In this document: in pieces, positions 20,489-62,207 of the stretch
Numbering within the stretch: position 1 is the first letter of the stretch
How the letters are laid out: every line of letters starts with the position of its first letter
Origin: Podarcis muralis
Taxonomy: Eukaryota
Assembly: GCF_964188315.1 (NCBI RefSeq)
Contig: NC_135656.1
Location: forward strand, 122,016,001-122,080,000
Length of the DNA: 64,000 nucleotides
Reading direction: 5' to 3'
Program-made: the position numbers and the translations under genes
The notes under the pieces: generated by a model
The model's input: only the letters and a program-made list of their open reading frames with translations
The model's database searches: none
Told to the model about the DNA's origin: nothing

Positions 20489-23400
20489 TCATTATTTATA
20501 CCCCACTCATCTGGCTGGGTTTCCCCAGCCACGCTGGGTGGCTGCCAATAAAATATTAAATAACAATAGTCAATCTGTAGATGGATTAAGCAATAAATTG
20601 GGAAATATAATTCAAAGCAAACAAGTGTGAAGTGATGCAGGTTGAGGCAAAAAATATTACTTTCATAAATATGCTCTGGGAGTTGAAGTGGGAGTGACTC
20701 TTCCTACAAAACTAAAAGCCCCTTTCAATCCAATATCCTCTGTTTTCTTTTTCTTTTTTGGATCATAGTCAAATGTATCTGAATGATTTAACCCACCTTA
20801 TTAAACCAAAGGGGCCACAAGATGGCATCCTGATCAATGGTGAATTTTACGTCTGCGGATCCTTCTCTCTCCATACTCCCAACTTTCCCTACGTGAAGGG
20901 AGTCATTGGCAAGCATCACAATGTTCACCACATCAAAATCAGCTGTCAGGTCCCCATTGTCATCTAAATATGCTCCACCCATAGAAGCATTGTAGAACTG
21001 AAAATCACTCAGGAAACGGTGAAACTAGAATGACAGAGAAGATCACAGCATTTAAGAAAGTTGGCTATTCCCACCCAGGTGTTTCACATATTATCAAGGC
21101 ACCTAGTGGCCATGGAGGGTTTTTCTATTTAATGTTCCCAATATACCGTATTTTTCGCCCCATAGGATGCACTTTTCCCCTCCAAAAATGAAGGGGAAAG
21201 GTGTGTGCATCCTATGGGGTGAATGCAAACGTTTGCTGATGCCTGGAGAGCGAGAGGGGTCGGTGCGCACTGACCCCTCTCGCTCTCCAGGCTTTGCGCA
21301 GCTCTCCGAAATGTCATTTCCATTTGATAAATCTTTAGTCTTCTCTTTGAAAGGATCACATTATTATTGCTACAGTCCATAGTCCAGCAGATCAAGGTAA
21401 CTATTGAAGGGCCTATCAATTCCATATCAATCATTTTTACCTACAGTATTTTATAACCTTATTTATTTCTATTTATTGATTGGTTCATTTCTGTTAAGGG
21501 ACGCGGGTGGCGCTGTGGGTAAAAGCCTCAGCGCCTAGGGCTTGCCGATCGAAAGGTTGGCGGTTCGAATCCCCGCGGCGGGGTGCGCTCCCGCTGCTCG
21601 GTCCCAGCGCCTGCCAACCTAGCAGTTCGAAAGCAGCCCTGGGTGCAAGTAGATAAATAGGGACCGCTTACTAGCGGGAAGGTAAACAGCGTTTCCGTGT
21701 GTGGCTCTGGCTCGCCAGAGCAGCGATGTCACGCTGGCCACGTGACTCGGAAGTGTCTCCGGACAGCGCTGGCCCCCGGCCTCTAGAGTGAGATGGGCGC
21801 ACAACCCTAGAGTCTGTCAAGACTGGCCCGTACGGGCAGGGGTAACTTTACCTTTACCTAATTTCTGTTAATTAAAGGAAATGGACCTACAAATCTGTCA
21901 TTGAACCGGACGTTATTTAAAATGGAACAAAATCCATCCAGATTATTAGAGAAGGAAAATGAATACCTGTGATGGTTGGACTTTTCCATCTTGCAACCTG
22001 TTCTGTCCCACCATCACCACCCTCTTGGGTCTAGAGGAGTACGCAGCATTTAAGGCATGGGCCAGAGCTCGGACCGTGTTGTAAATTCTGTAGGTGTCCT
22101 GAAACAGGCTCCTTTCAAGGACTTCTTGAGGGAAACCTGAAAGGTTCTCCTTCACTCTGCATCGCTTCTGGCCTTTCACAGAAAACAAATGCTTTGAATA
22201 TAAGCAATTATAGCATTGAAACCAAAATTTATCGAAATCACTAATGGTGTCATAAACTGGCAGATTACCATCGTGTTTTGATCTTTTTTTGCTCTGGATA
22301 AAGAAAGATAAATATCCATGAATGTGCTTGTTCTTAAGGATTTTGGGAGACATGTTGGAGCTGACATATGAGAGAGCTATTGTGATCCAAACTTTCCCAG
22401 TAATTGGTTCCAGGGTTCCGCCCACTATGTGAAGTAAAACTGCAGCTTCAATGGTGGACTGAGATTCCCCATAGGAAAGAAACACGTTGATTCGCCTGTC
22501 CATGGAAAGTGAAATCTTCTGCCAGAGCTTTCCGTTCCATTTTGCTATAAACAGATTGTCTCGTGAAAAGGTTTGTGAGAAGGCAACGCAGACACCATCC
22601 TTAGCAAGCGTAGATGCCAGGGTGCTCAGAAACCTTTCTCCATTGTCAGAGTCAGGAGCTATGAGCCCGATCCAAGTCCACCTGAAATGCAGGAGTAGCC
22701 TGACAATCCCTGAGCCTGGGGGTTCTTCATTTGGGGTCATTCGGTAGAGCAAAGGAGATTGTGTTTTGTCAAGGGCATGATGGACAGAAGCATAACTGAC
22801 CTAGGAAGAAAAGGAAGATATAGAGGGTTTATTTGGTCAACTGGAAATTGTGGTCATATTATGCTGTGCTTCTCTGTAAAGGAGATGTAGGGCACTTTGG
22901 GCAACAATACGCTCTTGTCAGTGACAGAAATAAATCAATTCATTCATTATAGACAACAATTTAATATGTCTTCAACATCGTTCTCTCCCTGAATGTTGTT
23001 ACCACACCCAATGGTACAGACTATGTAGAGTAAAGATATGTTGTATTTTCTACTGTTATTATTTTGTTCGGGGGAGGGTTCCATTTTTAGATCACCTGCG
23101 TGTTAGTTTCACATGAGTTTCGTTCCTTAGATTTGTTTTTCTGCCAAATATTTATTTATTCTCCATCACAGCAGGTTACCAAAATAGGCTTGTGTGAAGC
23201 CATCCCTGAGGTGTCTTCTGGAGGCTGCATTTCTGTCCCACCAAAGTAGGATTCATGCCCCATGTAAACTGCTATTTTCCTATAAAAAGAGGTGCCGGAA
23301 CTCACCATGAACACCTCCTTTGTCTACTTATAAAGTGCCAGATGGAGAGAGGAGAAAGCCCCTTCTCCCTTTGTAAGTCTAAAGCAGCTCACAGTACTGA

Positions 23401-27967: not shown

Positions 27968-30900
27968 TCAAATTCCATCTTTTGTTTTTGTTGTCAGGTG
28001 CTCCTTTGTGTTCAGATCAGGCCTCAGTACAATAATGTAGCACTTGGGGAGGAAGATGCAGCCCAGAAGCCCAGCACTGGAGGCCAACATAGAGAAGATC
28101 TGCACGGCTACCATGTATTTCCCCTTGGTGCTCAGGTAGGTGGGCACAAAGGACACCCAAACACTGCAGAAGACCAGCATGCTGAAGGTGATCAGCTTGG
28201 CTTCATTGAAGGCCCCAGGCAGCTTCCTGGCTAGGAAAGCCACCGTGAAGCAGATGGCAGCCAGGAAGCCCATGTAGCCGAGGGCACCATAAAACATGGC
28301 AGAAGACCCTACATTACATTGCAGGATAATCTCTGTAGGCTGCGAGTGCATGTCTGAGTCTGGGAATGGAGGAGATATTCCCAGCCAGGTGATGCAGATG
28401 ACAACTTGGACACTGGAACAGTAAATGACAATAGAGTTGGCCAGACTCTTCCCCAGCCATTTCCTCACCCTGTTCCCTGGCTTTGTGGCCAGGAAAGCCA
28501 GCACAACAGTAATGGTTTTTGCCAAGACAGAAGACACAGCAACTGAGAAGATAATGCTGAAGGCCATTTGTCGGAGGAGGCAGGTTGTGTTCATTGGCTG
28601 ACCAATGAAGAAGAAGGAGGACAAAAAGGAGAGCAGGAGAGAGAAGAGGAGTGTGTAGGACAGGTCCCTGTTGTTGGCTTTGATGATGGGAGTTTCCTTG
28701 TATTTAATGAAGATTCCTAACACGAGGCAAGTCATGAAGGACAATAATAGTGTGAAAGAAGCCAAGATGATCCCTAAAGGTTCTCCATGGGACAGAAAAG
28801 TTATAATCTTGGGGACACATCGAACTCGCTCCTTGTTTGGATGATGATCTTCTGGACATTTGGTACAGTGGTCTGCATCTGGAAAGAAGAAGAGTGACTT
28901 TAGCATCATTCGTATATCCACAAGAGTTCTATTACATTCCACAAAATACATGTTTTGTAGTGAACATTTTCATGCAACCTACAAATGAAAAATGGAAGGG
29001 AATTATGGAAGGCCGGGCCATCAGTGGGAGAGGTCGTGCATGGCACAGGCTGAGCCTGAGGTCTCCCACAAGCCAGAAATAGAATTTCCAGCAGATGAGA
29101 GCTGGGTTGTCACCTTCCTGCATTGTGGGAGAGCCATTATACCATAGAATACAAATGTTAGGACTAGTCAGATGAATATTCTTACCCAGTAAGTGTATGA
29201 CCAATTTTTATCTTGTCTAAATGGCAAAGATCAGCATTGGTGATGATGATGATACAAATAAATAGCTTTGGGGTGGGGGTGGGGTTGCTGAATCATCCAT
29301 CACCCTAATCAGTTCCCACCACTGTCATTTCTTCCAAGTTCCAACAATGCCTATAGAACCATTGTCCCATTTAATGCCTCCCTTTCCCCCTGCAATCACT
29401 TGCCTTCCTTGGTAGAGATTGTTTCTTCCATGCAGGGAAGGCAATCATAGCAGCAAAGGGCCTCTCCTTCCCGGATCACCTTGAAGTCCCCAGGGTGACA
29501 GATCTCGGTACATCTGGAATGAGGCACGGTCTACCCATAAGGACAGAGCAGCAAGAGTTAGGGGGATTTTTTAAATAATATTTTTATTAATTTTAACATA
29601 TAAATTATAAAATGTACCACAAAACTTATCACTTATACAATCTTTTTGGACTTCCATCAGCACCTCTGATGATCCACCGTTTTAACCACTTCTTATGCAT
29701 TTCTTAACTTTATATTGCCTTTACATCTCTTAACAAATCATCCTCCCCCTTATCCATTTTTACAATACTTCTAATAATACTCCTCACAAAACTTCTTGCA
29801 ACCCTACAAACGTTTTCTGTTCTTCACAATTACTTTTCAAATAGTCCATAAATTTTCAAATAGTCCAGTCTTCCGTGAATTTCTGGTCTCGCCGGTTTCG
29901 AATCCTTCCTGTTAGTTTATCTAATTTTGCATAGTCCATTAACTTCATCCTCCATTCTTCATCGATGGTAACTCTTCTTGCTTCCATTTTTGGGCCAATA
30001 ATATTCTTGCTGCTGTTACTGCATACAAAAAGAGCTTACATTCCTTTCTATTTATATCACTCCCCACAATGCCCAATAGAAATGCTTCTGGTTTCTTTAT
30101 AAATGTATATTTCAACATTTTTTTTCAACTCATTATATATCATCTCCCAGAAGCATTTCACCTTTTTACATTCCCACCACATGTGATAAAATGTTCCCTC
30201 TTTTTCTTTACATTTCCAACATTTATTACTGACTTTATACATTTTCGCTAACTTAACAGGTGTAATATACCATCTATACATCATTTTCATCACATTTTCT
30301 TTTAGGGCATTGCATGCAGTAAATGTTAAAGAGTTAGGGGGATTTCTAGCTATGGAAAATCACTGGAGATAACAATGGATTCCCTCACAAGCCAAGTAGC
30401 AGCTCAAGTGGAGTGGTGATTGGAAATAATGTTCATGAGCGGTGTGACATGGAATGAAAAGGTTAAACTCCTTCCCCACAAACCACAGTCCCAATCATGA
30501 TCAAGCCCTCCAGGAGCTGCTATTTAAATGAAAGAAAAAGACTGCAGTAATGTTGAAGGCCAGAAGGCCTTGATTTTGGATGAACATGCATAAAAGTGCA
30601 CTTCACGATAACCTCTGCAAAGAGTTAGTTCAGCTCTTCGGTGTTGCTTCATGCTGGTTTCAGCCTCCTGGCCTCCTGTACTCAACATGAGAAGAGACTG
30701 CTTTTCCAATATCCCTTCCCTTCCCTTCTCCACCCTCTTTCATTGCTCATCGGTCGGTCATTTTATGAGGGTCACTTTGTAACCCCAAGTAAACCTTTTC
30801 TATATTTCAATAAGATTCAGAGACACTGTCTTATGGATAATACAAAAAGAATCATTAGAACCTGAGATAAGTTACAGAATGAAGTGAATGGCTTAACCCA

Positions 30901-32490: not shown

Positions 32491-35400
32491 TTATTATTTA
32501 TACCCCACCCATCTGGCTGGGTTTCCCCAGCCACTCTGGGCAGCTTCCAACAAAGATTAAGAATACATTAAAATGTCACACATTAAAAACTTCCCTGAAC
32601 TGTCAGATGTCTTCTAAATGTCAGGTAGTTGTTTATCTCTTTGACATCTTATGGGAGGGCGTTCCACAGGGCGGGTGCCACTACCAAGAAGGCCCTCTGC
32701 CTGGTTCCCTGTAGCTTTGCTTCTTGCAGTGAGGGAACTGCCAGGAGGCCCTCGGCGCTGGACCTCAGTGTCCGGGCTGAATGATGGGGGTGGAGATGCT
32801 CCTTCAAGTATACTGGGCCGAGGCCTTTTAGGGCTTTAAAGGTCAACCAGCACCAACACTTTGAACTGTGCTCGGAAACGTACTGGGAGCCAATGTAGGT
32901 CTTTCAAGACCAGAGTTATGTGATCTCGGCGGCCGCCCCCAGTCACCTGTCTAGCTGCCGCATTCTGGATTAGTTGTACAGTGGTACCTCGGGTTAAGTA
33001 CTTAATTCGTTCCAGAGGTCCGTTCTTAACCTGAAACTGTTCTTAACCTGAAGCACCACTTTAGCTAATGGGGCCTCCTGCTGCTGCTGCTGCTGCGCCA
33101 CCGGAACACGATTTCTGTTCTCATCCTGAAGCAAAGTTCTTAACCTGAAGCACTATTTCTGGGTTAGCGGAGTCTGTAACCTGAAGCGTATGTAACCTGA
33201 AGCGTATGTAACCCGAGGTACCACTGTAAACAGATAAGAGAGATTTCTTTCAATGGTTGTTTAGAAGAATTTGTAAAATTTGAAAAAAGTAATAAAAAAA
33301 ATGTTTTGAAAAACTTTAAAGCATTTCAGATAGGGGTCTCTCACAGGTTCACCAGGAGATCCCAGATACTGAAATTGTGACCTCTACCTCTGAGTAACAG
33401 CCCCTTTCCCTGTTGGCATATTTAATTCAAGTAGCAATTGCAGTGTGGAACTTTCCAAAGGATTCATAGCACTACATATCAGCAGAGGAAGAAAAGAATA
33501 CCTGTGATGGCTGGAGTCGCCCACCATCCCACCTGTTTCCACCCAACATCACCATCTGCGTGGATCTCAATGAGTAGGCCGCATTTAAGGCATGGGCCAG
33601 AGCTCGGACAGTGTTGTAAATGCTGTCGGTGTCTTGAAACAGGCTTCTCTCGAGGACACCTTGAGGGAAGCCGTCCAGGTTCTCTCTCACTTTGCATTGG
33701 TTCTGGCCTTTCACGGATAAAACATGCTTTGAATACAAGCAATGATATCCTTTTCGCCAAACTGGATTGGCCTCTCTATGAGGTGGAACTGGTAGATTAT
33801 CATCATGTTTCATTCTTTTTTTCGTCTGGATAAATAAAGACAAATAGCCATGAATGTGTTGGTTCTGAAGTTTCTTGGGCGATGTTTTGGAGCTGATATA
33901 TGACAAAGCTATCGTGACCCAAACTTTTCCAGTAATGGGTTTCAGTGTTTCACTCACTATTTCCATCGTACGTGCGGCTTCAATGGGGGACTGAGAGTCC
34001 CCATAGTAGAGAAACACATTGATTCGCCTGTCCATGGAAAGTGAAATCTTCTGCTGGAGCTTTATGTATGCATCGGCTATAAAAAAGAAGCCTCGTGAAA
34101 TGGTTTGTGAGAAGGCAACACAGACACCGCCCTTAGCAAGCACAGGTGCCAAGGTGCTCAGAAACCTTTTTCCATTGTCAGTGTCAGCAGCTACCAGCCC
34201 GATCCAAGTCCACCTGAAATGCAGGAGTAGTCTGACAATCCCTGAGCCTGGGGGTTCTTCATTTGGGGTCACACGGTAGACGAAGGAAGGTTGCGTTTTG
34301 TCAAGAGCATGATGAACAGAAGCGTAACTGACCTGGTAGGACAGGGAAGAGATGGAGGATTTCATTTATTTTCAGGACTAAGCTCCGATATTATTTATTA
34401 ACTGAAAATTGCGGGCACAGAGAGCCATATTCTGCAGAGTTTCAAAGCATTGATTTCATTGGTTCTCTCCATCCCCATTCATTGGAATAAGGGGCTCAGC
34501 CCTTCCTTTTTTGAACAACAGCCCTTCCTTTTTTGAACAACTGTCACGTACTTGTGGTTGTGCCTTCATACCTGGGGGATTTTGTAGATTCCCGCAACGC
34601 TTGAAATCTGGATGGAAGTGTCCGAGTCAACCCCTTCAATTAAAACCAGCTGCTTGCTCTGTCTTCCACAATGGTAGTTTGGAACATTTGCCTGCCCAGG
34701 AGAGAGCAAATCCACAATGGTGTCATAGGTCACCCTTGCATCGAAATAGTTCTCATAGATGCTGTAGCCCAGGGTGATGTTGGGTAAGATCCTGGGATCC
34801 TGGTTGATCTCATGAATGGCAATCTGGAAGGACAAGAGGTACCAGTAGGCTATGAGCCTTGATTGCCTGCAACAAAGTGTGTATCATAAGGTCATTCTCT
34901 AGCCAATGAAAACCTGTCAAATCCCTGCCTTCTTAATCCTTAGTCTCTGGACACCACAGTGTTGGTACAGATTTTAGCATGAAGCATCACAGCAGATTCT
35001 CGTCACATTTTGGTTTGTGTGTGTTTGTTATAAGATAAATAGCTGCTTGCCAGTTAAGCAACAACTCCACACCCCCAGGGTTGCCATATTTCAAAAAGTG
35101 AAAATCCAGACACTTCCCACATGGGTTTCCCCAGGCATTCCCAATTTTGGGAAATTCCACCAGGATGCTATTATTGACAGACAACTCCCGGATGCATGGC
35201 AGCTCTAAACACCCTCAAAAGGAGAAGCATTTGAATACTTGAACCCTGAAAAGTTCACAATCATGAATGAAGGACGTCTTTTTCAGATCCAACCTGGCAA
35301 TTAGCAACAGCAGCCAAGAAGATGGCTGGCTTATAGGACAACCACAATTTCCCAGGTTAGAGGAAGGGATGGCACATGGCATGGTAATAACTGCTGGTGT

Positions 35401-38609: not shown

Positions 38610-39165
38610 CCGTTTCGCACCATAGGGCGCACCGGACCATAGGGCGCACCTAGTTTTGGGAGGCGGAAAACAAGAAAAAATTATTCTGAACCCCAGAAGC
38701 CGGAACAGCAAGAGGGATCTGGCTTCTGGGATACCGTGTGGCTGTTCTGCCTTCTGGGGTAACCGCGCCAAGCCTCTTCAGGGCAGCGGGATGAAGGCTC
38801 CCCCTGCCTGAAGAGGCTGTGCACGGCTAAGGCAGAAGCCAGGACAGGTGCGTTGCTGAAGGGGCACTGCGCCTTCTCTCTCTCTGCGCAGGTGCTGCGC
38901 AGAGAGGGAGAAGGGGCAGCGCCCTTCAGCGAAGATGGAGAAGGAACAGAAGAAGACCCTTCTGTTCCTCCTCGGGCTTCGCTGGACAGGCGCGTCGCTG
39001 CAAAGCGGGAGGAGGAATAGGAGACCCTTCTGTTCCTCCTCCGGCTTCCAGGACAGGCACGTCGCGGCGAAGCCAAGGAGCCTGCATTCGCTCCATAGGA
39101 CGCACACACATTTCCCCTTCATTTTTGGAGGGGGAAAAGTGTGTCCTATAGAGCGAAAAATACGG
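38610..39165 (-). mobile_element. Tc2-like MITE with hairpin cargo
   Basis: TA|CCGT...AAAAATACGG|TA; CCATAGGGCGCAC subterminal repeats; internal near-perfect hairpin at 38855-38930. Confidence 0.8.
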
Positions 39166-43014: not shown

Positions 43015-46000
43015 CTAGCAACAGGGTTCTTGCTTAATCTCAGAAGCCATACACTGGCTTTCCTCTGTGAATTCCCCTAGAGGGCATAAGATGGATACGC
43101 CATCTGAAGCCATTTCAACGCTCCAAGCAATGATGGGTCTCCCAACCCCAGCGTGAACTTTTTGGTGTCTGTTTAGATCCGCTTTTCTGTAAAACCTCTT
43201 CCCACATTCCAGACACTGGAAAGGTCTCACCCCAGTGTGGATTCTCTGGTGTGAAGTAAGGTCTGTTTGCTGCCTGAAATACTTCCCACACTCCGGGCAC
43301 TGATACGGTTTCTCTCCTGTGTGTATGCTTTGATGAGAGGTGAGGCTCTTTTTCTGACTGAAGGTCTTCCCACACTCCTGACACTCGTATCGTCTCTCTC
43401 CTGTATGGATTCTTTGGTGTGTGAGAAGGTTGGACTTGTCGTAAAAGCTCTTTCCACAGTGAGAGCACATGAAGGGTCTCTCCCCGGTGTGGATTCTCTG
43501 ATGGGAAGTGAAGCTCGTGATTTGGCTGAAGCTCTTTCCACATTCCGTGCAAGTATATGGTTTCTCCCCCGTGTGGATTCTTTGGTGTCTAGTAAGGTGT
43601 GGCTTATCGTAGAAGCTCTTCCCGCATTCCGAGCAAACGTACGGTTTCTCCCCAGTGTGGATTCTTTGGTGGGAAGTCAGGCCGAAGCTTTGATGGAAGC
43701 CTTTTCCACATACCAAGCACTGATATGGTTTCTCTCCTGTGTGGATTCTTTGGTGGATGACCAGGCTCGATTTGTCGTAAAATCCCTTTCCACACTCGGA
43801 ACACTTATACGGTCTTTCTCCCGTATGAATTCTTTGATGTGACGAGAAGCTTGCTAGCTGCCGGAAACTCTTTCCACACTCCAGACATTTGTATGGCTTC
43901 TCTCCTGTGTGGATTCTCCAATGAACGTTAAGGTCTGACTTGCGATTGAAGCTTTTCCCACATACTGGGCAGACATTTTTTCTTTGCCCTTTCTGTTTTC
44001 CCTGCTGAACTAAGATTTCGGGGAAATTGTCACCCTGCCACGTAACAGATTCATTCATCCACATCTCCGTTTGATTTCCTTCCTGCTTTTCTGGCTCAAC
44101 TTGATCTCCAATCCCCTCTTCCATTTCTAGATTCTTGTTCCTTTCCGACGACTCTCCATATGTCCCTTCATCAGTCTTACGCTCCCACTCATCACCTTCT
44201 GGAATACAGAGAGAGAAACTTGGTTAGAGGACAAAGCAGGGGAACAAGAAGGAAGTATTTTTTTAATCACCCATCATGCCAAATATACTGCTGCAGAGGA
44301 GACATCATACAGGTGTGGTTCTGCTTCCACATTCTTTCCAAAGACTTATAACTGCTCTACACATCCAACAGAAGTTCCTTCCAGATTTGATTGGGGCTGC
44401 ACTTGAAGATGACTTAGAAACATCAACTGGTCCAAACTGCAGCGGCCAAATTACTGTCTGGGGTTCCATTTAAATCTCATATAACACATGTTTTCAAACA
44501 GCTGCATTTTTTTATCCCATCTCAGCTGCATGTAAGTTGATCTACCCCTTTTGCAATGAACAGACCACACACTGCTAAGTAAGTTTAAAATGCTTTACTT
44601 ACAGTTCCAAGCTGCACTGGGTACCAGGCAACGGGGTTAATTCCCAGGCCCAATTCAAGGTACTCATGCTTGTGTTTAAAGCCATAAATCATTCAGGCCC
44701 CAAATATATGAAAAACTGCCTCCTTTCCTACAGACCTCCAAGAAGCCCACCCCCACCCCCCCGAAGCTCAGGAGAGTGATGGTGGCAGACAATAAGCTGT
44801 AGAACTCCCTCCTTACAGAAGTGTGTCTGGCAACTTCATTACAGTGGTACCTTGGTACTCAAATGGCTTGGCTCCCGAACAAATTGGCTCCCAAACACCG
44901 CAAACCCAAAGTAAGTGTTCTGGTTTGCGAACGTTTTTCGGAAGCCGAAAGTCTGACGTGGCTTCCGCTTCAGTGCAGCAAGCTCCTGCAGCCAATCGGA
45001 AGCCACGCCTTGGTTGTCAAACGGTTTTGGGGGTTGAACAGACTCCCGGAACGTATTAAGTTCGAGAACCAAGTTACCACTGTATATATGCCTTAGACAA
45101 ACCTCTTTAACCTGGCCTTTGACACCTGAGAGGAATATTTTCAAGATTCACTGTATATTTTGTGGCAGCATTTTTAAAAGTTGTATTGTATTGTAACAAA
45201 TGGATGGGACTTAACAAAGTGTGGCCCTTACCCAGAGAGGCCACGTTCCAGTAATTCTCCAGTTGCACCTCCCCGTGCAGAGCCCTTTGGCCCGGATCCA
45301 GCAGAGCCCACTCCTCCTCGGTAAAACACACAGCCACTTCCTCAAAGGCCATGGGACCCTGAATGGGGAATAAAATGCCACGTCCTTCAAGTTATATGTA
45401 TCTTACATTTATACATATATAGCTTGGGCTAGGGTATTTTTAGCGGAGAGCGGTTGTTGTGGGAATGGTTGTTGCTGTTGTCACTGTTCATTTTTTGCAC
45501 CTTTATTTTGGATATTATTATTTATGTGGAAATTGTTCAATTGGGTCGTGTGCTTTTTGATGCTTCGCTAATTGTTTGTGACCACTTTTGTTGTGCTTGT
45601 AGTTATCTAATTTTTTTATATGTTGTAAGCCGCCTTGAGCACGCTTTTAACTTTGGAAAGGCGGCATACAAACGAAAATTTGACTAACAGATTCTGCAAG
45701 ATTTCCGATTTGCAAGAAATGAGCATCCCCTTCCAAACCACCTCCACCACCCCTTTGGAGCCAAACTTTTGCCTAAGCAAAATAAGCAGAGCTCGCAGCC
45801 TCTGTTGTGTGTCGTTTGATGGGTTTAACATCTCTATCAACATATGACAGGCACCCGATATACAGTCGTACCTTGGAAGTAGAACAGAATCTGTTCCGAA
45901 AGTCCTTCGACTTTCAAAACGTTCAGAAACCAAAACACGGCTTCTGATTGGCTGCAGGAAGCCCTGTCGGACGTTCGGCTTCCAAAAATAGTTCGCAAAC

Positions 46001-46512: not shown

Positions 46513-49175
46513 TAATACCCCACCCATCTGGGCGGCTCCCAATCGAGTGTCAAAAACAATACAGCATTAAATATTAAAAACTTCCCTAAACAGGGCTGCC
46601 TTCAGATGTCTTTTAAAGATAAGATAGCTGTTTATTTCTTTCACATCTGATGGGAGGGCGTTCCACAGGGCGGGTGCCACTACCAAGAAGGCCCTCTGTC
46701 TGGTTCCCTGTAACCTCACTTCTCACAGACTCTGGGGTTGTGCGCCCATCTCACTCTAGAGGCCGGGAGCCAGCGCTGTCCGCAGACACTTCCGGGTCAC
46801 GTGGCCAGCGTGACAAGCTGCATCTGGCAAGCCGGCGCAGCACACGGAATGCCGTTTACCTTCCCGCTAGTAAGTGGTCCCTATTTATCTACTTGCACCC
46901 AGGGGTGCTTTCGAACTGCTAGGTTGGCAGGCGCTGGGACCGAGCGACAGGAGCACACCCCACCACGGGGATTCAAACCGCCGACCTTCTGATCGGCAAG
47001 TCCTAGGCGCTGAGGCTTTTACCCACAGCGCCACCCGCGTCCCCAACAAGATAATATAGAGGGACATAAATAATCATCAACAACAATAAAACATTATGAT
47101 CACCAAGTCATTCAATTTGCCACTTTCAGATCTCCCATAGATCAGTTTTAAAAAGAGAGAGGAGGGAGAAGAGGAGAGAAGGAGGAAAATGTTAAAATTA
47201 AAATATAAACATAACTGAAATGCGTGGTAAAACAATTACATTGAATCAATACAGTGGACGCTCAGGTTGCGAACATGATCCGTGTAGGCACGTTCGCAAC
47301 CCACAGCACCACATGATTCGGCACTTCTGCGCATGCACAAAGCGCAATTTAGTGCTTCTGCCGAAACCCGGAAGTAACCTGTTCTGGTACTTCCAGGTTC
47401 GGTGTGGTGCGCAACCCGAAAACGCGCAACCTGAAGCGTCTGTAGCCTGAGGTATGACTGTACATTAATTAAAACAGGAGACAAGATGGGATTCGACTCC
47501 ATTGTGTGTACAGAACAAGATCTACTATTGCAGTGGGATTTTTCCCTCTCCCCAAAGCCTGCTAAATCTGTTCTGGAGAGTTAAGAGAAAACTCCAAACA
47601 GATTTAATCCTGTCGTGCAAACGGAACTTGCTCCGTGCAGTCAAACCCAGCTTAGAGTTATGGTGAATTCAACCCTCAGGCTGAGAGAGGAATAAGCTCT
47701 GGGAGTTGTGGGGGTAGGACCCACACTCAGAGATGGACAGGCACCCCCCACAGGCAAGATCAGCGACTCATTAATTACAGGCTTCCACAAAAAGGAAGAA
47801 GGAGACCTAGACTTTTTCCTGGAGAACGTCATAGCACCCAGAAACTCAAGGAACGGGAAAGCCTCCCTTACCCAGCGACACGTCTTGAGTCCGAATCTCT
47901 GGCGCGATTCCCAAACAGAGTGACTTCTTGCAGGCATTAGGAACGTCCTTTTCTGACTCGAGGGAATCAGCAACCGCTTGTGGGAGGGACCGCGGCACCT
48001 GAAACAGCAACCAAGATTTTATTCAGGGAGCAGGGAAGAAAACTAGGGGACTGGGATGGATTTTCACCATCTTCTTCTTCCAGCTCTGCAAAACTCTGCA
48101 GGACTCAGTGGCGATGGAACAGGAACACAGGAAGCAGAGAATGGCCCACCTGCCACCAGGGCGGATTTGATTTAAATCAAATTGATTTAAATCACGATTT
48201 ATATCATGATTTAAATCACGATTTATATCATGATTTAAATCACAATTTATATCATGATTTAAATCACTAGTAGCTTTTACAGTTATATCAAAAATTACTG
48301 ATTTGGTTATACTATTAGAAATACTGTATTTCTAATACTATTAGAAATAATGAAATTACAGTGGTACCTTGGATTACATACGTTTCAGGATACATACGCT
48401 TCAGGTTAGAGACTCCACTAACCCAGAAATAGTGCTTCAGGTTAAGAACTTTGCTTCAGGATGAGAACAGAAATTGTGCTCTGGCGGTGTGGCGGCAGCA
48501 GGAGGCCCCATTAGCTAAAGTGGTGCTTCAGGTTAAGAACAGTTTCAGGTTAAGAACGGACCTCCAGAACAAATTACCGTATTTTTTGCACCATAACACT
48601 CACTTTTTTCCTCCTAAAAAGTAAGGGGAAATGTCTGTGCGTGTTATGGAGGGAATGCCTACGGGTGGCATGCCTACGGATTTTCCTCCTCTAAAAACTA
48701 CGTGTGTGTTATGATCGGGTGCGTGTTATAGAGCGAAAAATACGGTAAGTCTATTGTGAGGTTGGCTGTTTACATTTGGACAACTTTCCTGCTGTACTTT
48801 ATCAGAAGGAGAAAAATCATCATATCCTTAATAATAATTTAAACAGTTTATTTAACTAAAACAATAACATTATTGCATATGTATCCATGTTTGTTAACTG
48901 ATGTGATTAAATAATTTTATTTTTTTTAACGGAGTTTTAGCACACATGAAAAACTTAAAACAAATCCTTATTTCCTGATAGTCTTTCCTTACTTCCTTAT
49001 AGCCTTTGGACTGTAATGTAACTTAAATAGAAAACTGTCTTTAGGAAGATTTTCCTCCAAAAGCATCTTATTTTAAAAATCTGATTTAAATTTAAAAAAT
49101 CCAATTTAAATCCAAAAAATCTTATTTAAATGAAACAAACCAGATAGGCAGGATATAAATAATTAATTATTATAA

Positions 49176-49216
<41 letters not shown>

Positions 49217-50442
49217 CCTGGAGACCTAGAGATGTGACGATAGACTGCGCTGCCGCCTTTCTTTTAGCAAATGTTTTGTGACACTGGGGAAGGTTACTGA
49301 TTGCCAAAAATTGGAAAAGCAGCAGCGTCCCAACTAAAACAAACTGGTTATCTAAAATGATGGAATACTTCCATACTGCCGAACTAACAGGGAGGATAAG
49401 AGGAGATATGGTACAAAAAGTGAATAAGGAGTGGGCTATCTTTAAGGATGTATGGAAGTGAGAGCTGGACCATAAAGAAGGTTGATCGCCGAAGAATTGA
49501 TGCTTTTGAATTCTGATGCTGGAGGAGATGGTTGGACAGTGTTCTCGAAGCTACAAACATGAGTCTGACCAAACTGCGGGAGGCAGTGGAAGACAGGAGT
49601 GCCTGGCGTGCTCTGGTCCAGGGGGTCACGAAGAGTCGGACACGACTAAACGACTAAACAACAACAACAATCTTTAAGGAATACATCAAAATTTATGTGG
49701 AAAAAGTAGAATTTCTGACAGATACTGAGTGAATCCAGAAAATGATTAGAGCGAAAGGAGAGTAAAGTTAAGATAAAAGAAGAGATTGAAGAAGTAATGA
49801 AATGTGTCTAAGCCAGTTGGAAAAATAAAGTAGCGTAACAAGAACGGGTGGAAGTCAAGTCACTTGGTAGGTGTCCGTATGGGGTAGGTGTGTAGGTATG
49901 TTGATATGTATAGTATAGGTAGGTATTATATAGGGTAATGTAGGTATGTTTTATATTAGGAAAATTTGATAGTTTGTTGTGTTCATGTATTGTGTAAATG
50001 TATATGTATTTTGATAATAAAAAAGATGGAAATATTCTCTCACCTGTTTCTCCTCTCCCTGCTTCTTCCCCTCCACCTGGCTCAGGAGGAAGCCTTCGGC
50101 CAAGGCCACCGCCTGGGAGCTGGTCTCCGCTCCGCACTCCCTGACCCAGTTCTCCATCTCCGGGGGGAGGACAGCCAGGAACTGCTCCAGGATCACCAGG
50201 TCCAGCATCTGGGCCTTGGTGAGCCTTTCCGGCTTCAGCCACCGACGGCAGAGACTGTGGAGTCGGCTGCAAACCTCTCGGGGTCCCTTGGCCTCCTGGT
50301 AGAGTAACCCTCTGAAGCGCTGGCGTTGGTCATCAGAGCTGGCATCGTCCACCCCCGGGATCTCTGGGACAGACTTTTCCCCGTACGTCCCACGGCTCCC
50401 AATCTCAACAGCGTCAGGGCCAGCTGCGGTTCGCTCCTCCAT
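43015..50442 (-). CDS. SCAN-KRAB-C2H2 zinc finger protein (ZKSCAN-like), ~569 aa, 10 fingers
   Basis: SCAN exon 50442-50044 (gcgaagATGg; [19 protein letters not shown]...WLKPE...LVILEQFL; CAG|GTGAGA). KRAB-A exon 45358-45232 (127 nt, [25 protein letters not shown]). Finger exon 44198-43015 (10 C2H2 with TGEKP linkers). Phases 0 and 1 join in frame; extra small exons cannot be excluded. Confidence 0.85.
44842..45082. mobile_element. pogo/Tigger-like MITE
   Basis: TA|CAGTGGTACCTTGG ... CCAAGTTACCACTG|TA. Confidence 0.75.
45863..46061. mobile_element. pogo/Tigger-like MITE (degenerate)
   Basis: TA|CAGTCGTACCTTGG ... CTACGACTG|TA. Confidence 0.65.
46070..46265 (+). mobile_element. CR1 3' fragment
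   Basis: ATTAGGAAGAATTTTCTGACGATAAGAGCTG...CCTGCATTGCAGGGGGCTGGACTAG. Confidence 0.65.
46470..46725 (-). mobile_element. L2 3' fragment
   Basis: (AAT)n then AGGGCTGCCTTCAGATGTC...GGGAGGGCGTTCCACAGGGCGGGTGCCACTACC. Confidence 0.75.
46726..47043 (-). mobile_element. Sauria SINE (same subfamily as 21498-21860), tail lost
   Basis: Reverse of GGGACGCGGGTGGCGCTGTGGGTAAAAGCCTCAGCGCCTAGG. Confidence 0.85.
47252..47460. mobile_element. pogo/Tigger-like MITE
   Basis: TA|CAGTGGACGCTCAGGTTGCGAAC ... CCTGAGGTATGACTG|TA; related copy at 51002-51246. Confidence 0.7.
48359..48576 (+). mobile_element. pogo/Tigger-like MITE (9778 family), right TIR lost
   Basis: Colinear with 9778-10019 up to ...GAACAAATTA. 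Confidence 0.8.
48577..48745 (+). mobile_element. Short Tc2-like MITE nested in the previous element
   Basis: TA|CCGTATTTTTTGCACCATAACAC ... TATAGAGCGAAAAATACGG|TA. Confidence 0.8.
49449..49669 (+). mobile_element. RTE-BovB LINE 3' end, inserted in an L1 relic
   Basis: GAGAGCTGGACCATAAAGAAG...GATGCTTTTGAATT...GGGGTCACGAAGAGTCGGACACGACT..(CAA)n; 11-bp TSD ATCTTTAAGGA. Confidence 0.88.
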
Positions 50443-51001
50443 CTTCGCTCTGTACACCAAGGCGGCTTCCGAGATCGCCGTAAATATATTCTCCCGCCAA
50501 TTTCTCTCTTGTTAAAGCCAAGAGCTGTCCGGCTCGGAGGCTTGCAAAGGGATGGAGTTCTTCTGCGTGGAGCAAAGGTATTTTCGCAAGCAGGTGCGGA
50601 CGATTCCAGCTAGCTACCAACTGGCTTCTGCCTGCAGGAAAAACAGACAAATGTTAAGGCTCAGTGAGAAACCAGAGATTGAAGAGCTGTTTGGGGGGGA
50701 AAATTAAAAATACTGTTTGTAATGCTGTAACCCACCCTGGCACCTTAGCGTGAATGGCAGGGTAATAAGTAAATAAGTTATGCACCCACATGCGGTGGTT
50801 TTGCCTCTAGGTCGCTACAGTGTTGGCGATGCAATCTTTGATCGCATTTCTAAAATCAAGAACTGGGCCACCCACAAAGTAGCCCCTTCTCTTGTTTTCC
50901 CTGGCCTCAAACTCCTCCATAAATATCTTATTCATTTCCTCTTGGCTGCAGCCAGATCAACAGCTGGAGGCTGAAAAACGTCCTTTGGTTTTTTATTATT
51001 A

Positions 51002-51660: not shown

Positions 51661-52020
51661 TTAATTTGAGACTGTGCATTATAAAGGAAAGGAAAGATAC
51701 AGTGGTACTTCAGGTTACAGACTCTGCTAACCCAGAAATAGTGCTTCAGGTTAAGAAATTTGCTTCAGGATGAGAACAGAAATTGTGTGGCGGCAGCAGG
51801 AGGCCCCATTAGCTAAAGTGGTGCTTCAGGTTAAGAACGGACCTCCGGAACGAATTACCGTATTTTTCGCCCTATAAGACGCACTTTTTCCCCTTCAAAA
51901 ATGAAGGGGAAATGTGTGTGCGTCTTATGGGGCGAATGCAGGCTTTCGCTGAAGCCTGGAGAGCGAGAGGTGTCGGTGCGCACCGACACCTCTCACTCTC
52001 CAGGCTCCAGGAAGCTATCC

Positions 52021-52800
52021 GCAAGCCTTGCACGCCCGGGGGAACTCCCCCCGGGCGCGCAAGGCTTGCGGGCGGCAGCCTGCAGCGCGGAGCGCGGGGC
52101 GCCCTTCGGAGGACGCCCCGTGCTTCGCGCTGGTGTCCACAAGCCTTGGGCGCCTGAGGGAACTCCGCCCGGGCGCGCAAGGCTTGCGGGCGGCAGCCTG
52201 CAGCGCGGAGCGCCCTTCGGAGGACGCCCCGCGCTTCGCGCAGCTGTCCGCAAGCCTTGGGCGCCTGGGGGAACTCCGCCCGGGCGCGCAAGGCTTGCGG
52301 GCGGCAGCCTGCAGCGCGGAGCGCGGGGCGCCCTTCGGAGGATGCCCCGTGCATCGCGCAGCTGTCCGCAAGCCTTGGGCGCCTGGGGGAACTCCGCCCG
52401 GGCGCGCAAGGCTTGCGGGCGGCAGCCTGCAGCGCGGAGCGCGGGGCGCCCTTCGGAGGATGCCCCGTGCATCGCGCAGCTGTCCGCAAGCCTTGGGCGC
52501 CAGGGGGAACTCCGCCCGGGCGCGCAAGGCTTGCGGGCGGCAGCCTGCAGCGCGGAGCGCCCTTTGGAGGACGCCCCGTGCTTCGCGCAGCTGTCCGCAA
52601 GCCTTGGGGGCCTGGGGGAACTCCCCCCGGGCGCGCATGCCTTGCGGGCGGCAGCCTGCAGCGCGGAGCGCGGGGCGCCCTTCGGAGGACGCCCTGTGCT
52701 TCGTGTAGGTGTCCGCAAGCCTTGCGCGCCCGGGGGAACTCCCCCCGGGCATGCACGGCTTGCGGGCGGCAGCCGGCAGCGCGGAGCACGGGGCGCCCTC
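52021..52800. repeat. CpG-rich minisatellite, ~118/111-bp unit, about 6.5 copies
   Basis: Unit starts (GCAAGCCTTG) near 52021, 52139, 52250, 52368, 52486, 52597 and 52715. Confidence 0.92.
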
Positions 52801-52807
52801 CGTAGGA

Positions 52808-53015
52808 GGCTGCGGAGGGTGGCGCGGAGCTGCCCGCGCTCCAGGGCTTCTTGCAGCTCCACGCCACCCTCCGGATCCCAGCGCGAAGGCGCGGGGCTGC
52901 GGAGGGTGGCACGGAGCTGCCTGCGCTCCAGGGCTTCTTGCAGCTCCGCGCCACCTTCTGGATCCTGGCGCGAAGCCGCGCGGGGCTCCGGAGGGTAGCG
53001 CAGAGCTGCCTGCAT
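52808..53015. repeat. Second GC-rich tandem, 87-89-bp unit, about 2.4 copies
   Basis: GGCT.CGGAGGGT starts at 52808, 52895 and 52984; the complete units fold into a 21-bp stem. Confidence 0.85.
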
Positions 53016-53848
53016 CCCGAAGCCTGGTGCGCGCTGAAGAGCGCCCCCGGGCTTCACGCACCTCTCCGCAAGCCTGGGGAGACCAGTGTGGCTCCCTAGG
53101 CTTGCGGATATCAGGCTGTTCTGGGGGCTGGGGTCGGGGGAAGCTCGGGCTTCCCCCGCGCCTGCCCCGTGCCTGGGGAGGGGAAAAATTTTTTTTTCTT
53201 TATTCTCCCCCCCCAAAAATTAGGTGCGTCCTATGGGGCGGTGCGTCCTATGGGGCGGTGCGTCCTATGGGGCGAAAAATACGGTAAGTACTTAACCTGA
53301 GGTACCACTGCATACCTGAATGAGCGTCTCCAACCCCATTGTACAGCCCGGACACTGAGATCCAGCTCAGAAAGCCTTCTGGCAGTTCCCTCCCTGCGAG
53401 AAGCTTTAAATATACAGTGTGATGGCTTCCTCTTTTCAAATTTACACAGCAGGAAACAGAGATTTGCTCAATTAAATGCGGATTCAAGCATTCCGTTGCC
53501 TTGGGGGGGCCGGGTTTATTACATTTTTATTTTCTCCTTTTTGCAGTTTGTAACTGTCTTTGCGGGAGGAGGGTTATGGGTTATTCTCTGCCTTTTGTGT
53601 TCTCGTTTTGTATTTTTATGTTGTCAACCGCCCTGCGATTTTCAGGAAACGGGTGGTATACAAAATTCATAACTAATCATAAAAATAATAACAACGTGAG
53701 AAGGTTTGAGCTCTGCAAGCAAAACGAAGTGGGGGGAATTGCTTCAAGCACCGTGCAAGCTTTCCGCAAAGCGAAGTAAATCAGGTTTAGGGCTCAAGAA
53801 AGGAGACCTTCTGGAGAGGGTCCAAAAAGTCTGGCTTTTAATTTATAT

Positions 53849-60776: not shown

Positions 60777-61700
<924 letters not shown>

Positions 61701-61737
61701 GTTTAGTCGTGTCCGACTGTTTCCGACCTGCGGAAAG

Positions 61738-61982
61738 ATGTCAAGTCCCGCAGGGCCGTAACTCTTGTGAAAGAGCATTCCACCAGATCGGGGCCACAGC
61801 CAAAAAAGCCCTGGCTCTGGTTGAGGCCAGCCTAACCTCCCTGTGGCCTGGGACCTCCAAGATGTTTTTGTTTGAAGACCGTAAGGTCCTCCGTGGGACA
61901 TACCAGGAGAGGCGGTCCCATAGGTACGAGGGTCCTAGGCCATGTAGGGCTTTAAAGGTTAAAAACAGCACCTTAAACCTGA
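61738..61982 (-). mobile_element. L2 LINE 3' fragment
   Basis: Minus-strand FKVLFLTFKALHGLGPSYLWDRLSWYVPRRTLRSS...RAFLAVAP.WWNAL. Confidence 0.75.
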
Positions 61983-62207
61983 TGTTAGCCATGTTCAAAT
62001 ATCTCAAGGGCTGTCACATGGAAGAGGAAAATATGGAGCAGGTTTGGGGTTTTTTAGGTAAAATCATATATACAGTGGAACCTCAACTTACGTACAGCTC
62101 TACTTACATACGATTCCAGTTACGACCTTCAGTAGGTGCTTCGACTTAGGAACTTTCCTCTAGATCCGAACAAAGGCATCCCTTCTTATTGTGGGAGCAA
62201 GTGCACC

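What the first reader, a model, noticed from the sequence alone, without database searches (positions are those of the whole stretch)
51858..53284. DNA-transposon shell filled with CpG-rich tandem hairpin arrays
Between short Tc2-like ends sits cargo made almost entirely of fold-back units. It includes a loop-less 50-bp palindrome (51955-52004) and ~6.5 copies of a 118/111-bp unit with two stems each (GCAAGCCTTG.GCG...CGCAAGGCTTGC and CGGGGCG...CGCCCCG around CCTTCGGAGG). It also has 87-89-bp units with a 21-bp stem, and further stems near 53066-53107 and 53137-53158. CpGs are largely undecayed. Family members in this window share ends but differ in cargo: 38610-39165 has a different ~36-bp stem and 48577-48745 is nearly empty. 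Inference: a MITE lineage that builds palindromes and minisatellites internally and drops a ready-made CpG island or cruciform into the probable first intron of a KRAB gene.
Basis: partly seen in the sequence, partly recalled or inferred. Interest (0 to 1): 0.72.

Follow-up and report, generated by a model that had tools for sequence, protein, structure and literature searches.

The report
Hairpin-repeat Passer transposon in lizard
This is a young, non-coding copy of a cut-and-paste transposon (Passer family, pogo superfamily) whose GC-rich interior is built of palindromes and tandem repeats; it is a vertebrate example of a known kind of repeat-carrying transposon, and nothing shows that it regulates the nearby zinc-finger gene.

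Summary
Window 51858-53284 is a 1427-bp element with 27-bp terminal inverted repeats (25/27) and a TA target duplication. Uninterrupted copies of the MITE it landed in confirm the insertion site. The interior holds a 50-54-bp palindrome, 6.8 copies of a 118/111-bp two-hairpin unit, 2.3 copies of an 87/89-bp hairpin unit and two more hairpins. It is 74% G+C, with CpG observed/expected 0.9 against 0.41 for the rest of the window.

The ends belong to the Passer family of the pogo superfamily. The left repeat matches the TIR printed in the PS-TIR primers of the fish Passer paper at 24/27 positions. The right end matches the ends of squamate 'PasserC' entries. No transposase is encoded.

Three other copies in the window share the ends but carry different cargo. 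Two Podarcis muralis gene models contain the same modules in other combinations.

Unit differences are partly CpG decay, and the most amplified units have the worst stems. This points to youth, not protection or selection for pairing.

The 'first intron' placement is plausible but unproven. The gene is SCAN-KRAB-ZNF, and the element lies 1.2 kb upstream of the predicted splice acceptor of its first coding exon.

The scan found the same family before on other DNA of this genome (s1-179025, s1-152707, s1-180249).

The parts
51856..51857 (.). Left copy of the TA target-site duplication
   Evidence: Uninterrupted host MITE copies read AATTAAGT at this site.
51858..51884 (+). Left terminal inverted repeat, 27 bp, starting CCGTA
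   Evidence: It matches the TIR printed in the PS-TIR primers of the fish Passer paper with 3 mismatches, none expected by chance.
51858..51940 (+). 'Hairpin end' of the chassis: the TIR, a short inner hairpin, and an inverted copy of the 17-bp inner TIR motif
   Evidence: DNA fold -31.7 kcal/mol, z = -10.8. Conserved in the copies at 21146, 39165 (reverse) and 48577.
51953..52006 (.). Near-perfect palindrome. The core 51955-52004 is self-complementary at 48/50 positions; the one mismatched pair is a CpG to TpG change.
   Evidence: Also present in the copy at 21146 and, as translation, in P0001 and P0002.
52017..52807 (+). Tandem array of 6.8 units (118, 111, 118, 118, 111, 118, 97 bp), each with two hairpins. 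The 111-bp variant lacks one copy of a 7-bp internal repeat.
   Evidence: TRF score 1254. Unit split and 88-100% pairwise identity. Folds.
52808..53016 (+). Tandem array of 2.3 units of 87/89 bp, each with a roughly 20-bp stem
53065..53108 (.). Single hairpin whose outer stem (CCGCAAGCC / GGCTTGCGG) is the same as that of the first hairpin of the 118-bp unit
53124..53168 (.). Single GC-rich hairpin
53176..53222 (-). A/T- and G-run segment. Read on the minus strand, it follows the repeated TIR motif, like the TAGTTTT-GGAGG-AAAA stretch of squamate and turtle PasserC entries.
   Evidence: Alignment with the copy at 38610. Published ends in Table S1 of PMC9976928, compared by eye.
53223..53274 (-). 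Three perfect direct copies of the 17-bp inner TIR motif, presumed transposase binding sites
   Evidence: TRF 100% matches. Two copies in the element at 38610. Published PasserC ends also repeat this motif.
53258..53284 (-). Right terminal inverted repeat
53285..53286 (.). Right copy of the TA target-site duplication
51700..51855 (+). Left part of the host MITE (ends CAGTGGTACCTCAGGTTAAG) into which the element inserted. The right part is 53287-53310.
21146..21311 (+). Truncated copy of the same subfamily: hairpin end, palindrome and the start of the 118-bp unit. 85% identical over 167 bp, with several decayed CpGs.
38610..39165 (-). Complete copy with the same ends and TA duplication but different cargo: 30-bp arms at 90% complementarity, and a 39-bp direct repeat
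48577..48745 (+). 169-bp copy with almost no cargo, inserted at the same TA of another copy of the host MITE
50044..50631 (-). First coding exon (SCAN domain) of the neighbouring SCAN-KRAB-ZNF gene. Predicted acceptor AG at 50633-50632, ATG at 50442-50440, donor GT at 50043-50042.
   Evidence: Pfam SCAN E = 9e-35. Sequence and translation. The splice sites were read by eye.
45230..45355 (-). KRAB box exon of the same gene. Its zinc-finger exon is 43015-44124 (-).
   Evidence: Pfam KRAB E = 7.5e-20. zf-C2H2.

Best explanation
The stretch is a young, non-autonomous member of the Passer family (pogo superfamily of cut-and-paste transposons). It has no gene of its own. A Passer transposase made elsewhere in the genome would recognise the 27-bp ends and the five copies of the 17-bp inner motif, cut the element out and paste it into a TA. 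Here the TA lay inside an older MITE.

The ends form a constant chassis: a 'hairpin end' and a 'direct-repeat end'. Between them sits a cargo of GC-rich palindromic modules. The cargo was inherited from a transposing subfamily. Its modules have been multiplied head to tail by slippage or unequal exchange, which hairpin-forming DNA favours. At least one such duplication is very recent.

The high CpG content reflects youth, not function.

Shown here: the anatomy, the family of the ends, the sharing of chassis and modules with other copies, and the recent unit duplication. Inferred: mobilisation in trans, the slippage mechanism, and neutrality towards the nearby gene.
For: Ends and boundaries:
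- TA duplication and exact boundaries come from paralogous empty sites.
- The TIRs are 27 bp and agree at 25/27.
- The left TIR matches the TIR in the PS-TIR primers of the fish Passer paper (PMC9976928, Table S2) at 24/27, with none expected by chance.
- Table S1 of that paper lists the CCGTA/CCGTA end motif with TA/TA duplications; the nine-letter start CCGTATTTT occurs 129 times in that file. Its Anolis, Zootoca, Vipera and turtle entries start with the TIR, a repeat of its inner motif and a TAGTTTT-GGAGG-AAAA stretch. The right end here and the left end of the 38610 copy have the same layout.

No coding capacity:
- Pfam finds nothing credible in the long stop-free frames.
- Two whole-database protein searches with the 365-aa frame returned only two lizard gene models that had absorbed a copy.

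Shared chassis and modules:
- Four copies in 64 kb share the chassis.
- The copy at 21146 shares the palindrome and the junction to the 118-bp unit.
- P0002 (Podarcis muralis A0A670HUA6) carries chassis, palindrome, the start of hairpin A and then an 87-type unit.

Youth and lack of selection on pairing:
- Units 3 and 4 are identical, and the outer units are the most divergent.
- The three 17-bp repeats are perfect.
- Units 2-5 share three changes that break the first stem. Units 1 and 7 keep a nearly perfect stem.

CpG decay:
- At most 6 of 8 substitutions between the 87-bp units are CpG transitions: 4 read directly, 2 more if the neighbouring pair descends from CCCGG.
- The older copy at 21146 has lost about 4 of 12 CpGs.

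Precedent: tandem-repeat-carrying MITEs with palindromes at unit junctions, and flanks acting as a 'cassette', are described in PMC3879986, in the review PMC12628747 (Xenopus Xstir and miDNA4) and in PMC4079207.
Against: - No autonomous Passer copy was seen in this window, so a source of transposase in this genome is not shown here.
- In the 118-bp array, CpG transitions are only about 2.6 times as frequent per site as other transitions. That is weaker than expected for heavily methylated DNA.
- One symmetric double change keeps the 50-bp palindrome paired between two copies. This could mean correction between arms or selection for pairing.
- The element sits 1.2 kb from the first coding exon of a gene, so an effect on that gene is not excluded.
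Confidence: 0.85

Rival explanations
1. The element has been taken over as a CpG-island promoter, first exon or enhancer of the SCAN-KRAB-ZNF gene, or of a divergent transcript. Its GC boxes and unmethylated CpGs would recruit the transcription machinery.
For: - It meets the compositional criteria of a CpG island over 1.3 kb.
- It holds 13 GGGCGG/CCGCCC boxes, against 6.3 +/- 2.4 in shuffles.
- It lies 1.2 kb upstream of a splice acceptor that implies an upstream non-coding exon.
Against: - The boxes come with the repeat unit, one or two per unit. They are not independent.
- The substitution spectrum shows CpG decay.
- The same cargo occurs at other loci (scan notes).
- Another CpG-rich stretch at 58.5-59.3 kb could hold exon 1.
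- There are no expression data.
Confidence: 0.06
2. The hairpin arrays are precursors of small RNAs (a miRNA-like or piRNA/siRNA cluster) carried around by the transposon.
For: - There are many 45-65-nt stems with strongly negative z-scores.
- Rfam miRNA-precursor models give weak matches across the array.
Against: - All Rfam matches are far below the gathering scores, for example 58 bits against 268 and 38 against 75. They occur on both strands, as any palindrome would.
- The stems are 70-80% G+C.
- The amplified units have degraded stems.
- There are no RNA data.
Confidence: 0.04
3. The array is an ordinary genomic satellite that lies between two unrelated transposon ends by chance, or an assembly artefact.
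For: - Two adjacent units are identical, which assemblers can create.
- I could not lay reads on the stretch.
Against: - The two ends are a matched pair with a TA duplication and a precise paralogous empty site.
- The array begins directly after a palindrome that is joined to the same chassis in another copy and in two Podarcis gene models.
- The other units carry diagnostic differences.
- No array copy occurs elsewhere in the window.
Confidence: 0.04

Closest known systems
Passer (PS) transposons, pogo superfamily (PMC7386202; PMC9976928), including the squamate 'PasserC' entries of Table S1
   Same: - TA target duplication and short TIRs under 30 bp starting CCGTA.
- 24/27 identity to the TIR printed in the PS-TIR primers of the fish Passer paper.
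- A repeated inner TIR motif followed by a TAGTTTT-GGAGG-AAAA stretch, as in the Anolis, Zootoca, Vipera and turtle entries.
   Different: - It has no DD35D transposase gene.
- The interior of the published elements is replaced by GC-rich palindromic repeats.
- The inner motif is present three times at one end, not twice.
Tandem-repeat-containing MITEs: DTC84 and pearl-type elements of bivalves (PMC3879986)
   Same: - Constant flanks act as a cassette for a short internal array.
- The repeats contain palindromes.
- Copies differ in unit number and make-up.
   Different: - A different superfamily (an AA duplication there) and an invertebrate host.
- The units there are not double hairpins, and the cargo is not CpG-rich.
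Xenopus Tc1/mariner MITE miDNA4 and Xstir, which carry internal satellite-like repeats (as reviewed in PMC12628747)
   Same: A vertebrate cut-and-paste MITE whose interior holds one to many copies of a repeat unit, taken as a route from transposon to satellite.
   Different: - The repeat and the ends are unrelated in sequence.
- The expansion model there rests on AT-rich microhomologies. Here the units are GC-rich palindromes.
Foldback transposons such as Tetris of Drosophila virilis (PMC4079207)
   Same: The interior is dominated by repeats that fold back, and the element is a source of tandem repeats.
   Different: Foldback elements have long terminal inverted repeats made of the tandem units. 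Here the TIRs are 27 bp, and the arrays are direct repeats of units that are each palindromic.

Membership tests
Passer family (pogo superfamily), non-autonomous derivative | TA target-site duplication | tested here: met
   A TA lies on both sides. Uninterrupted paralogous host copies read AATTAAGT. The copies at 38610 and 48577 also have TA/TA.
Passer family (pogo superfamily), non-autonomous derivative | Short TIRs (under 30 bp) starting CCGTA, similar in sequence to known Passer TIRs | tested here: met
   The TIRs are 27 bp and agree at 25/27. They match the TIR in the PS-TIR primers of PMC9976928 at 24/27, with none expected by chance. The Anolis PasserC TIR matches the copy at 39165 with 3 mismatches in 29.
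Passer family (pogo superfamily), non-autonomous derivative | Subterminal sequence shared with autonomous elements | tested here: met
   The repeated inner motif plus the TAGTTTT-GGAGG-AAAA stretch is at the right end here and at the left end of the 38610 copy. I compared these by eye with the Anolis, Zootoca, Vipera and Mesoclemmys entries.
Passer family (pogo superfamily), non-autonomous derivative | DD35D transposase, in the element or supplied by an autonomous partner in the same genome | not testable with these tools
   The element encodes none. Only 64 kb of this genome can be read here. Published tables list Passer transposases in the lacertids Zootoca vivipara and Lacerta viridis.
MITE in the strict sense | Small size (usually under about 800 bp) and high copy number | tested here: inconclusive
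   This copy is 1427 bp; the others are 169 and 556 bp. There are four copies in 64 kb. The genome-wide number was not measured here. Scan notes that speak of hundreds to thousands of copies are unverified.
Tandem-repeat-containing transposon ('cassette plus internal array') | Constant ends with an internal tandem array whose content varies among copies | tested here: met
   The chassis is shared by four copies with different cargo. P0002 has the palindrome followed directly by an 87-type unit.
CpG island | Length over 200 bp, G+C over 50%, CpG o/e over 0.6 | tested here: met
   1427 bp, 71% G+C, o/e 0.91.
CpG island | Unmethylated in the germline | tested here: inconclusive
   There are no methylation data. 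Up to 6 of 8 differences between the 87-bp units are CpG transitions (4 direct, 2 inferred), and the older copy has lost CpGs. The 118-bp array shows only a 2.6-fold excess.
miRNA or other Rfam RNA family | A match reaching the family's gathering score | tested here: not met
   The best matches are 58 bits against 268 and 38 against 75, on both strands.
Foldback (FB-type) transposon | Long terminal inverted repeats composed of the tandem units | tested here: not met
   The TIRs are 27 bp. The arrays are direct repeats, and the long 'inverted' pairs at 72% only reflect palindromic units.

The most novel reading that the evidence does not exclude
The fold-back cargo may not be passive. The symmetric double change that keeps the 50-bp palindrome paired between two copies, together with a 79%-paired interior, would fit selection at the level of the element. 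Self-pairing cargo could bring the two ends together and so ease transposition. CpG-island-like cargo could keep copies open and seed new promoters near genes, such as this SCAN-KRAB-ZNF gene.
Probability: 0.07. Interest if true: 0.6.

Novelty: new member of a known kind. Interest (0 to 1): 0.22.

Why it matters
There are three modest points.
- It documents in a lizard a Passer-derived non-autonomous family whose cargo is a set of exchangeable GC-rich hairpin repeat modules. This adds a vertebrate case to the link between transposons and tandem repeats.
- Copies like this scatter 1-kb stretches that pass every compositional test for a CpG island. They are also free of stop codons on both strands, with frames of 360-407 aa. 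They can therefore mislead CpG-island calls and gene prediction. Two Podarcis muralis UniProt models (A0A670K5H4, A0A670HUA6) contain translated pieces of such elements.
- Long palindromes and minisatellites next to genes are likely sites of length polymorphism and replication trouble. This makes them useful markers and possible sources of structural variation.

Tried and rejected
I did not resend or trim the request. There are therefore no data on depth, polymorphism, array length or RNA.
- I used the 365-aa stop-free frame across the element as bait for other copies. The search for homologous proteins gave one hit and the search of protein representatives gave one hit. Both match the chassis and palindrome, and one also matches an 87-type unit. 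Neither matches the 118-bp array.
- Two metagenome scans, with a 28-nt core of the 118-bp unit and with the TIR, found nothing. This was expected for a lizard repeat.
- The search of earlier findings by sequence was blank.
- Pfam on the long frames gave nothing credible.
- Rfam gave only generic sub-threshold hairpin matches.
- A higher-order 347-bp period is reported by TRF at 92%. I did not adopt it. It rests mainly on the pattern of a 7-bp slippage-prone indel, and unit identities do not follow it.
- The cargo of the 38610 copy shares no module with this element at the sensitivity used.
- The literature search found no description of this particular interior in lacertids. Repbase and Dfam could not be consulted.
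Full report
**What is in the sequence**

Window 51858-53284 is bounded by a 27-bp inverted repeat that starts CCGTA. The two arms agree at 25 of 27 positions. A TA lies on each side.

The element sits inside an older MITE whose own ends read CAGTGGTACCTCAGGTTAAG. Two uninterrupted copies of that MITE, at 9778-10019 and 32979-33226, read AATTAAGT across the site. The boundaries and the TA duplication are therefore fixed by paralogous empty sites.

From left to right, the element contains:
- An 83-bp 'hairpin end': the TIR, a small inner hairpin and an inverted copy of the 17-bp inner TIR motif. It folds with z = -10.8.
- A palindrome at 51953-52006. Its core is self-complementary at 48/50 positions, and it folds with z = -9.2.
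- An array of 6.8 units of 118 or 111 bp at 52017-52807 (TRF score 1254; unit split).
- An array of 2.3 units of 87/89 bp at 52808-53016.
- Two single hairpins at 53065-53108 and 53124-53168.
- A short A/T- and G-run segment.
- Three perfect direct copies of the 17-bp inner TIR motif, the last of which is part of the right TIR.

The interior as a whole folds at -551 kcal/mol as single-stranded DNA. Dinucleotide shuffles give -382 +/- 7, so z = -23, and 79% of bases are paired. The element is 71% G+C with CpG observed/expected 0.91. The rest of the window has 0.41.

**Which transposon it is**

I tested that lead against the published data.
- The PS-TIR primers in Table S2 of PMC9976928 print the Passer TIR. 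Searched in the window with up to three mismatches, that TIR hits exactly one place, the left end of this element, at 24/27. None is expected by chance.
- Table S1 of the same paper lists the CCGTA/CCGTA end motif together with TA/TA duplications; its nine-letter start occurs 129 times in that file.
- The Anolis carolinensis, Zootoca vivipara, Vipera berus and turtle entries begin with the TIR, a second copy of its inner motif and then a TAGTTTT-GGAGG-AAAA stretch. Read on the minus strand, the right end of this element has that layout. So does the left end of the copy at 38610.
- The Anolis 'PasserC' TIR matches the copy ending at 39165 with three mismatches in 29.

Passer is one of six families of the pogo superfamily. 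It is characterised by a TA duplication, short TIRs and a DD35D transposase (PMC7386202, PMC9976928). I did not test that equivalence. PMC7325037 does list a 'TC2' group of pogo-like elements in fish, gecko and snake.

The element encodes no transposase. Its 360-407-aa stop-free frames on both strands have no credible Pfam match. They are a by-product of the G+C content.

**Chassis and cargo**

The window holds four copies of the family.
- The copy at 48577-48745 (169 bp) is little more than the two ends.
- The copy at 38610-39165 (556 bp) has the same two ends but different cargo: 30-bp arms at 90% complementarity and a 39-bp direct repeat.
It is 85% identical over 167 bp.

I also used the 365-aa frame as bait in two protein searches. 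Each returned one Podarcis muralis gene model.
- A0A670K5H4 starts with the translated hairpin end and palindrome (83% over 42 aa).
- A0A670HUA6 carries, at residues 130-202, the hairpin end, the palindrome and the start of the first hairpin. This is followed directly by a stretch 60% identical to the translated 87-bp unit.

Both hits being Podarcis muralis hints at a lacertid host, but the species was not established.

The palindrome and the 87-type unit are therefore modules that occur at other loci in other combinations. The cargo was mostly inherited and was not built at this site.

Within the element, the single hairpin at 53065-53108 shares its outer stem with the first hairpin of the 118-bp unit. 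This suggests that the array unit arose from a single-copy module of the same kind.

**How the arrays grew, and whether the hairpins are maintained**

- Units 3 and 4 are identical. Units 2-5 are 95-100% alike, and the outer units (1, 6, 7) are 88-93% alike to the rest. This is the usual picture of an array that grows in the middle by slippage or unequal exchange.
- The 118/111 difference is one copy of a 7-bp internal repeat.
- Units 1 and 7 keep an almost perfect 24-bp first stem. The amplified units 2-5 share three changes that break it. Pairing was therefore not preserved while the array grew.
- In the 87-bp array each unit has its own unpaired CpG decay in a different arm.
- One observation points the other way. 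Between this copy and the one at 21146, the 50-bp palindrome differs by a symmetric double change, G to T in one arm and C to A in the other. The change keeps the pair. It is a single event, and I record it as unexplained.

**CpG content: youth or protection?**

- Four of the 8 substitutions between the two full 87-bp units are CpG transitions by direct reading. A neighbouring pair (CCCAG against CCTGG) adds two more if the ancestor was CCCGG. That gives up to 6 of 8, on about 28% of the positions.
- The older copy at 21146 has lost about 4 of 12 CpGs, against 1 of 12 here.
- In the 118-bp array the excess of CpG transitions is only about 2.6-fold.

Together this suggests that the family decays as methylated DNA does and that this copy is simply young. 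The perfect 17-bp repeats, the identical units and the intact ends agree with youth. Without methylation data this remains an inference.

**Gene context**

- Bases 1-35 kb hold minus-strand vomeronasal type-2 receptor exons (7tm_3 and ANF_receptor).
- A minus-strand SCAN-KRAB-C2H2 gene has its zinc-finger exon at 43015-44124, its KRAB box at about 45230-45355 and its SCAN exon at 50044-50631.
- The SCAN exon holds the start codon (50442-50440), with an in-frame stop upstream. It is preceded by a pyrimidine tract and an AG at 50633-50632. This implies a non-coding exon 1 further upstream.
- The element begins 1.2 kb upstream of that acceptor. It is therefore in intron 1 if exon 1 lies beyond 53.3 kb, for example in the CpG-rich stretch at 58.5-59.3 kb. 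Otherwise it is in the upstream region.

I could not decide between these placements.

**What could not be done**

I did not resend it in another form, so no reads were laid.
- Metagenome scans were blank.
- Rfam gave only sub-threshold, two-stranded hairpin matches.
- Repbase and Dfam are not available here, so I cannot say whether this interior is already catalogued.

**Comparison and verdict**

Transposons whose constant ends act as a cassette for a short internal tandem array are well described. Examples are DTC84 and pearl-type elements (PMC3879986; the repeats there carry palindromes at unit junctions), Xenopus Xstir and miDNA4 (reviewed in PMC12628747) and Tetris (PMC4079207).

This element is a lizard member of that kind, built on a Passer chassis. 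Its distinctive points are that nearly all cargo is palindromic and that it is CpG-rich.

The same conclusion was reached by earlier follow-ups of this scan on other copies in the same genome (s1-179025, s1-152707, s1-180249). Their statements on copy number and polymorphism were not re-tested here.

I rate it a new member of a known kind, of low to moderate interest.

Noticed in passing
window 48340-48800 and 51690-53320; empty paralogues at 9778-10019 and 32979-33226: Two different Passer-family elements (169 bp and 1427 bp) sit at exactly the same TA (AAT-TA-AGT) of two separate copies of the same host MITE. The flanks outside the host copies are unrelated. This suggests a preferred target site, not a duplication. 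It is also noted by the scan as s1-153056.
   Followed up: partly
window 51955-52004 versus 21238-21287: The 50-bp palindrome differs between the two copies by a symmetric double change: G to T in the left arm and C to A in the right arm. The change keeps the base pair. It is a single event that could mean arm-to-arm correction or selection for pairing.
   Followed up: partly
P0001 (UniRef A0A670K5H4) and P0002 (UniRef A0A670HUA6), Podarcis muralis: Two public gene models ('ribonuclease H', 'Ig-like domain-containing protein') contain translated pieces of this transposon family: hairpin end, palindrome and an 87-type unit. These are probably annotation artefacts or exonised copies.
   Followed up: partly
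window 51872-53216, both strands: The element carries stop-free frames of 360-407 aa on both strands with no credible Pfam match. This is a trap for gene prediction.
   Followed up: yes
window 7258-8259, 17233-18234, 27968-28951 (minus strand), with 11547-12353, 21946-22752, 33472-34365: A tandem cluster of vomeronasal type-2 receptor genes (7tm_3 and ANF_receptor exons), repeating about every 10 kb.
   Followed up: no
window 60975-62149 (+): A C2H2 zinc-finger exon on the plus strand is split over two overlapping reading frames (60975-61637 and 61256-62149). No KRAB or SCAN exon was found for it in the window. It may be a frameshifted pseudogene.
   Followed up: no
window 21500-21860: A GC-rich SINE-like repeat, which looks tRNA-derived by eye, lies just downstream of the truncated Passer copy.
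   Followed up: no
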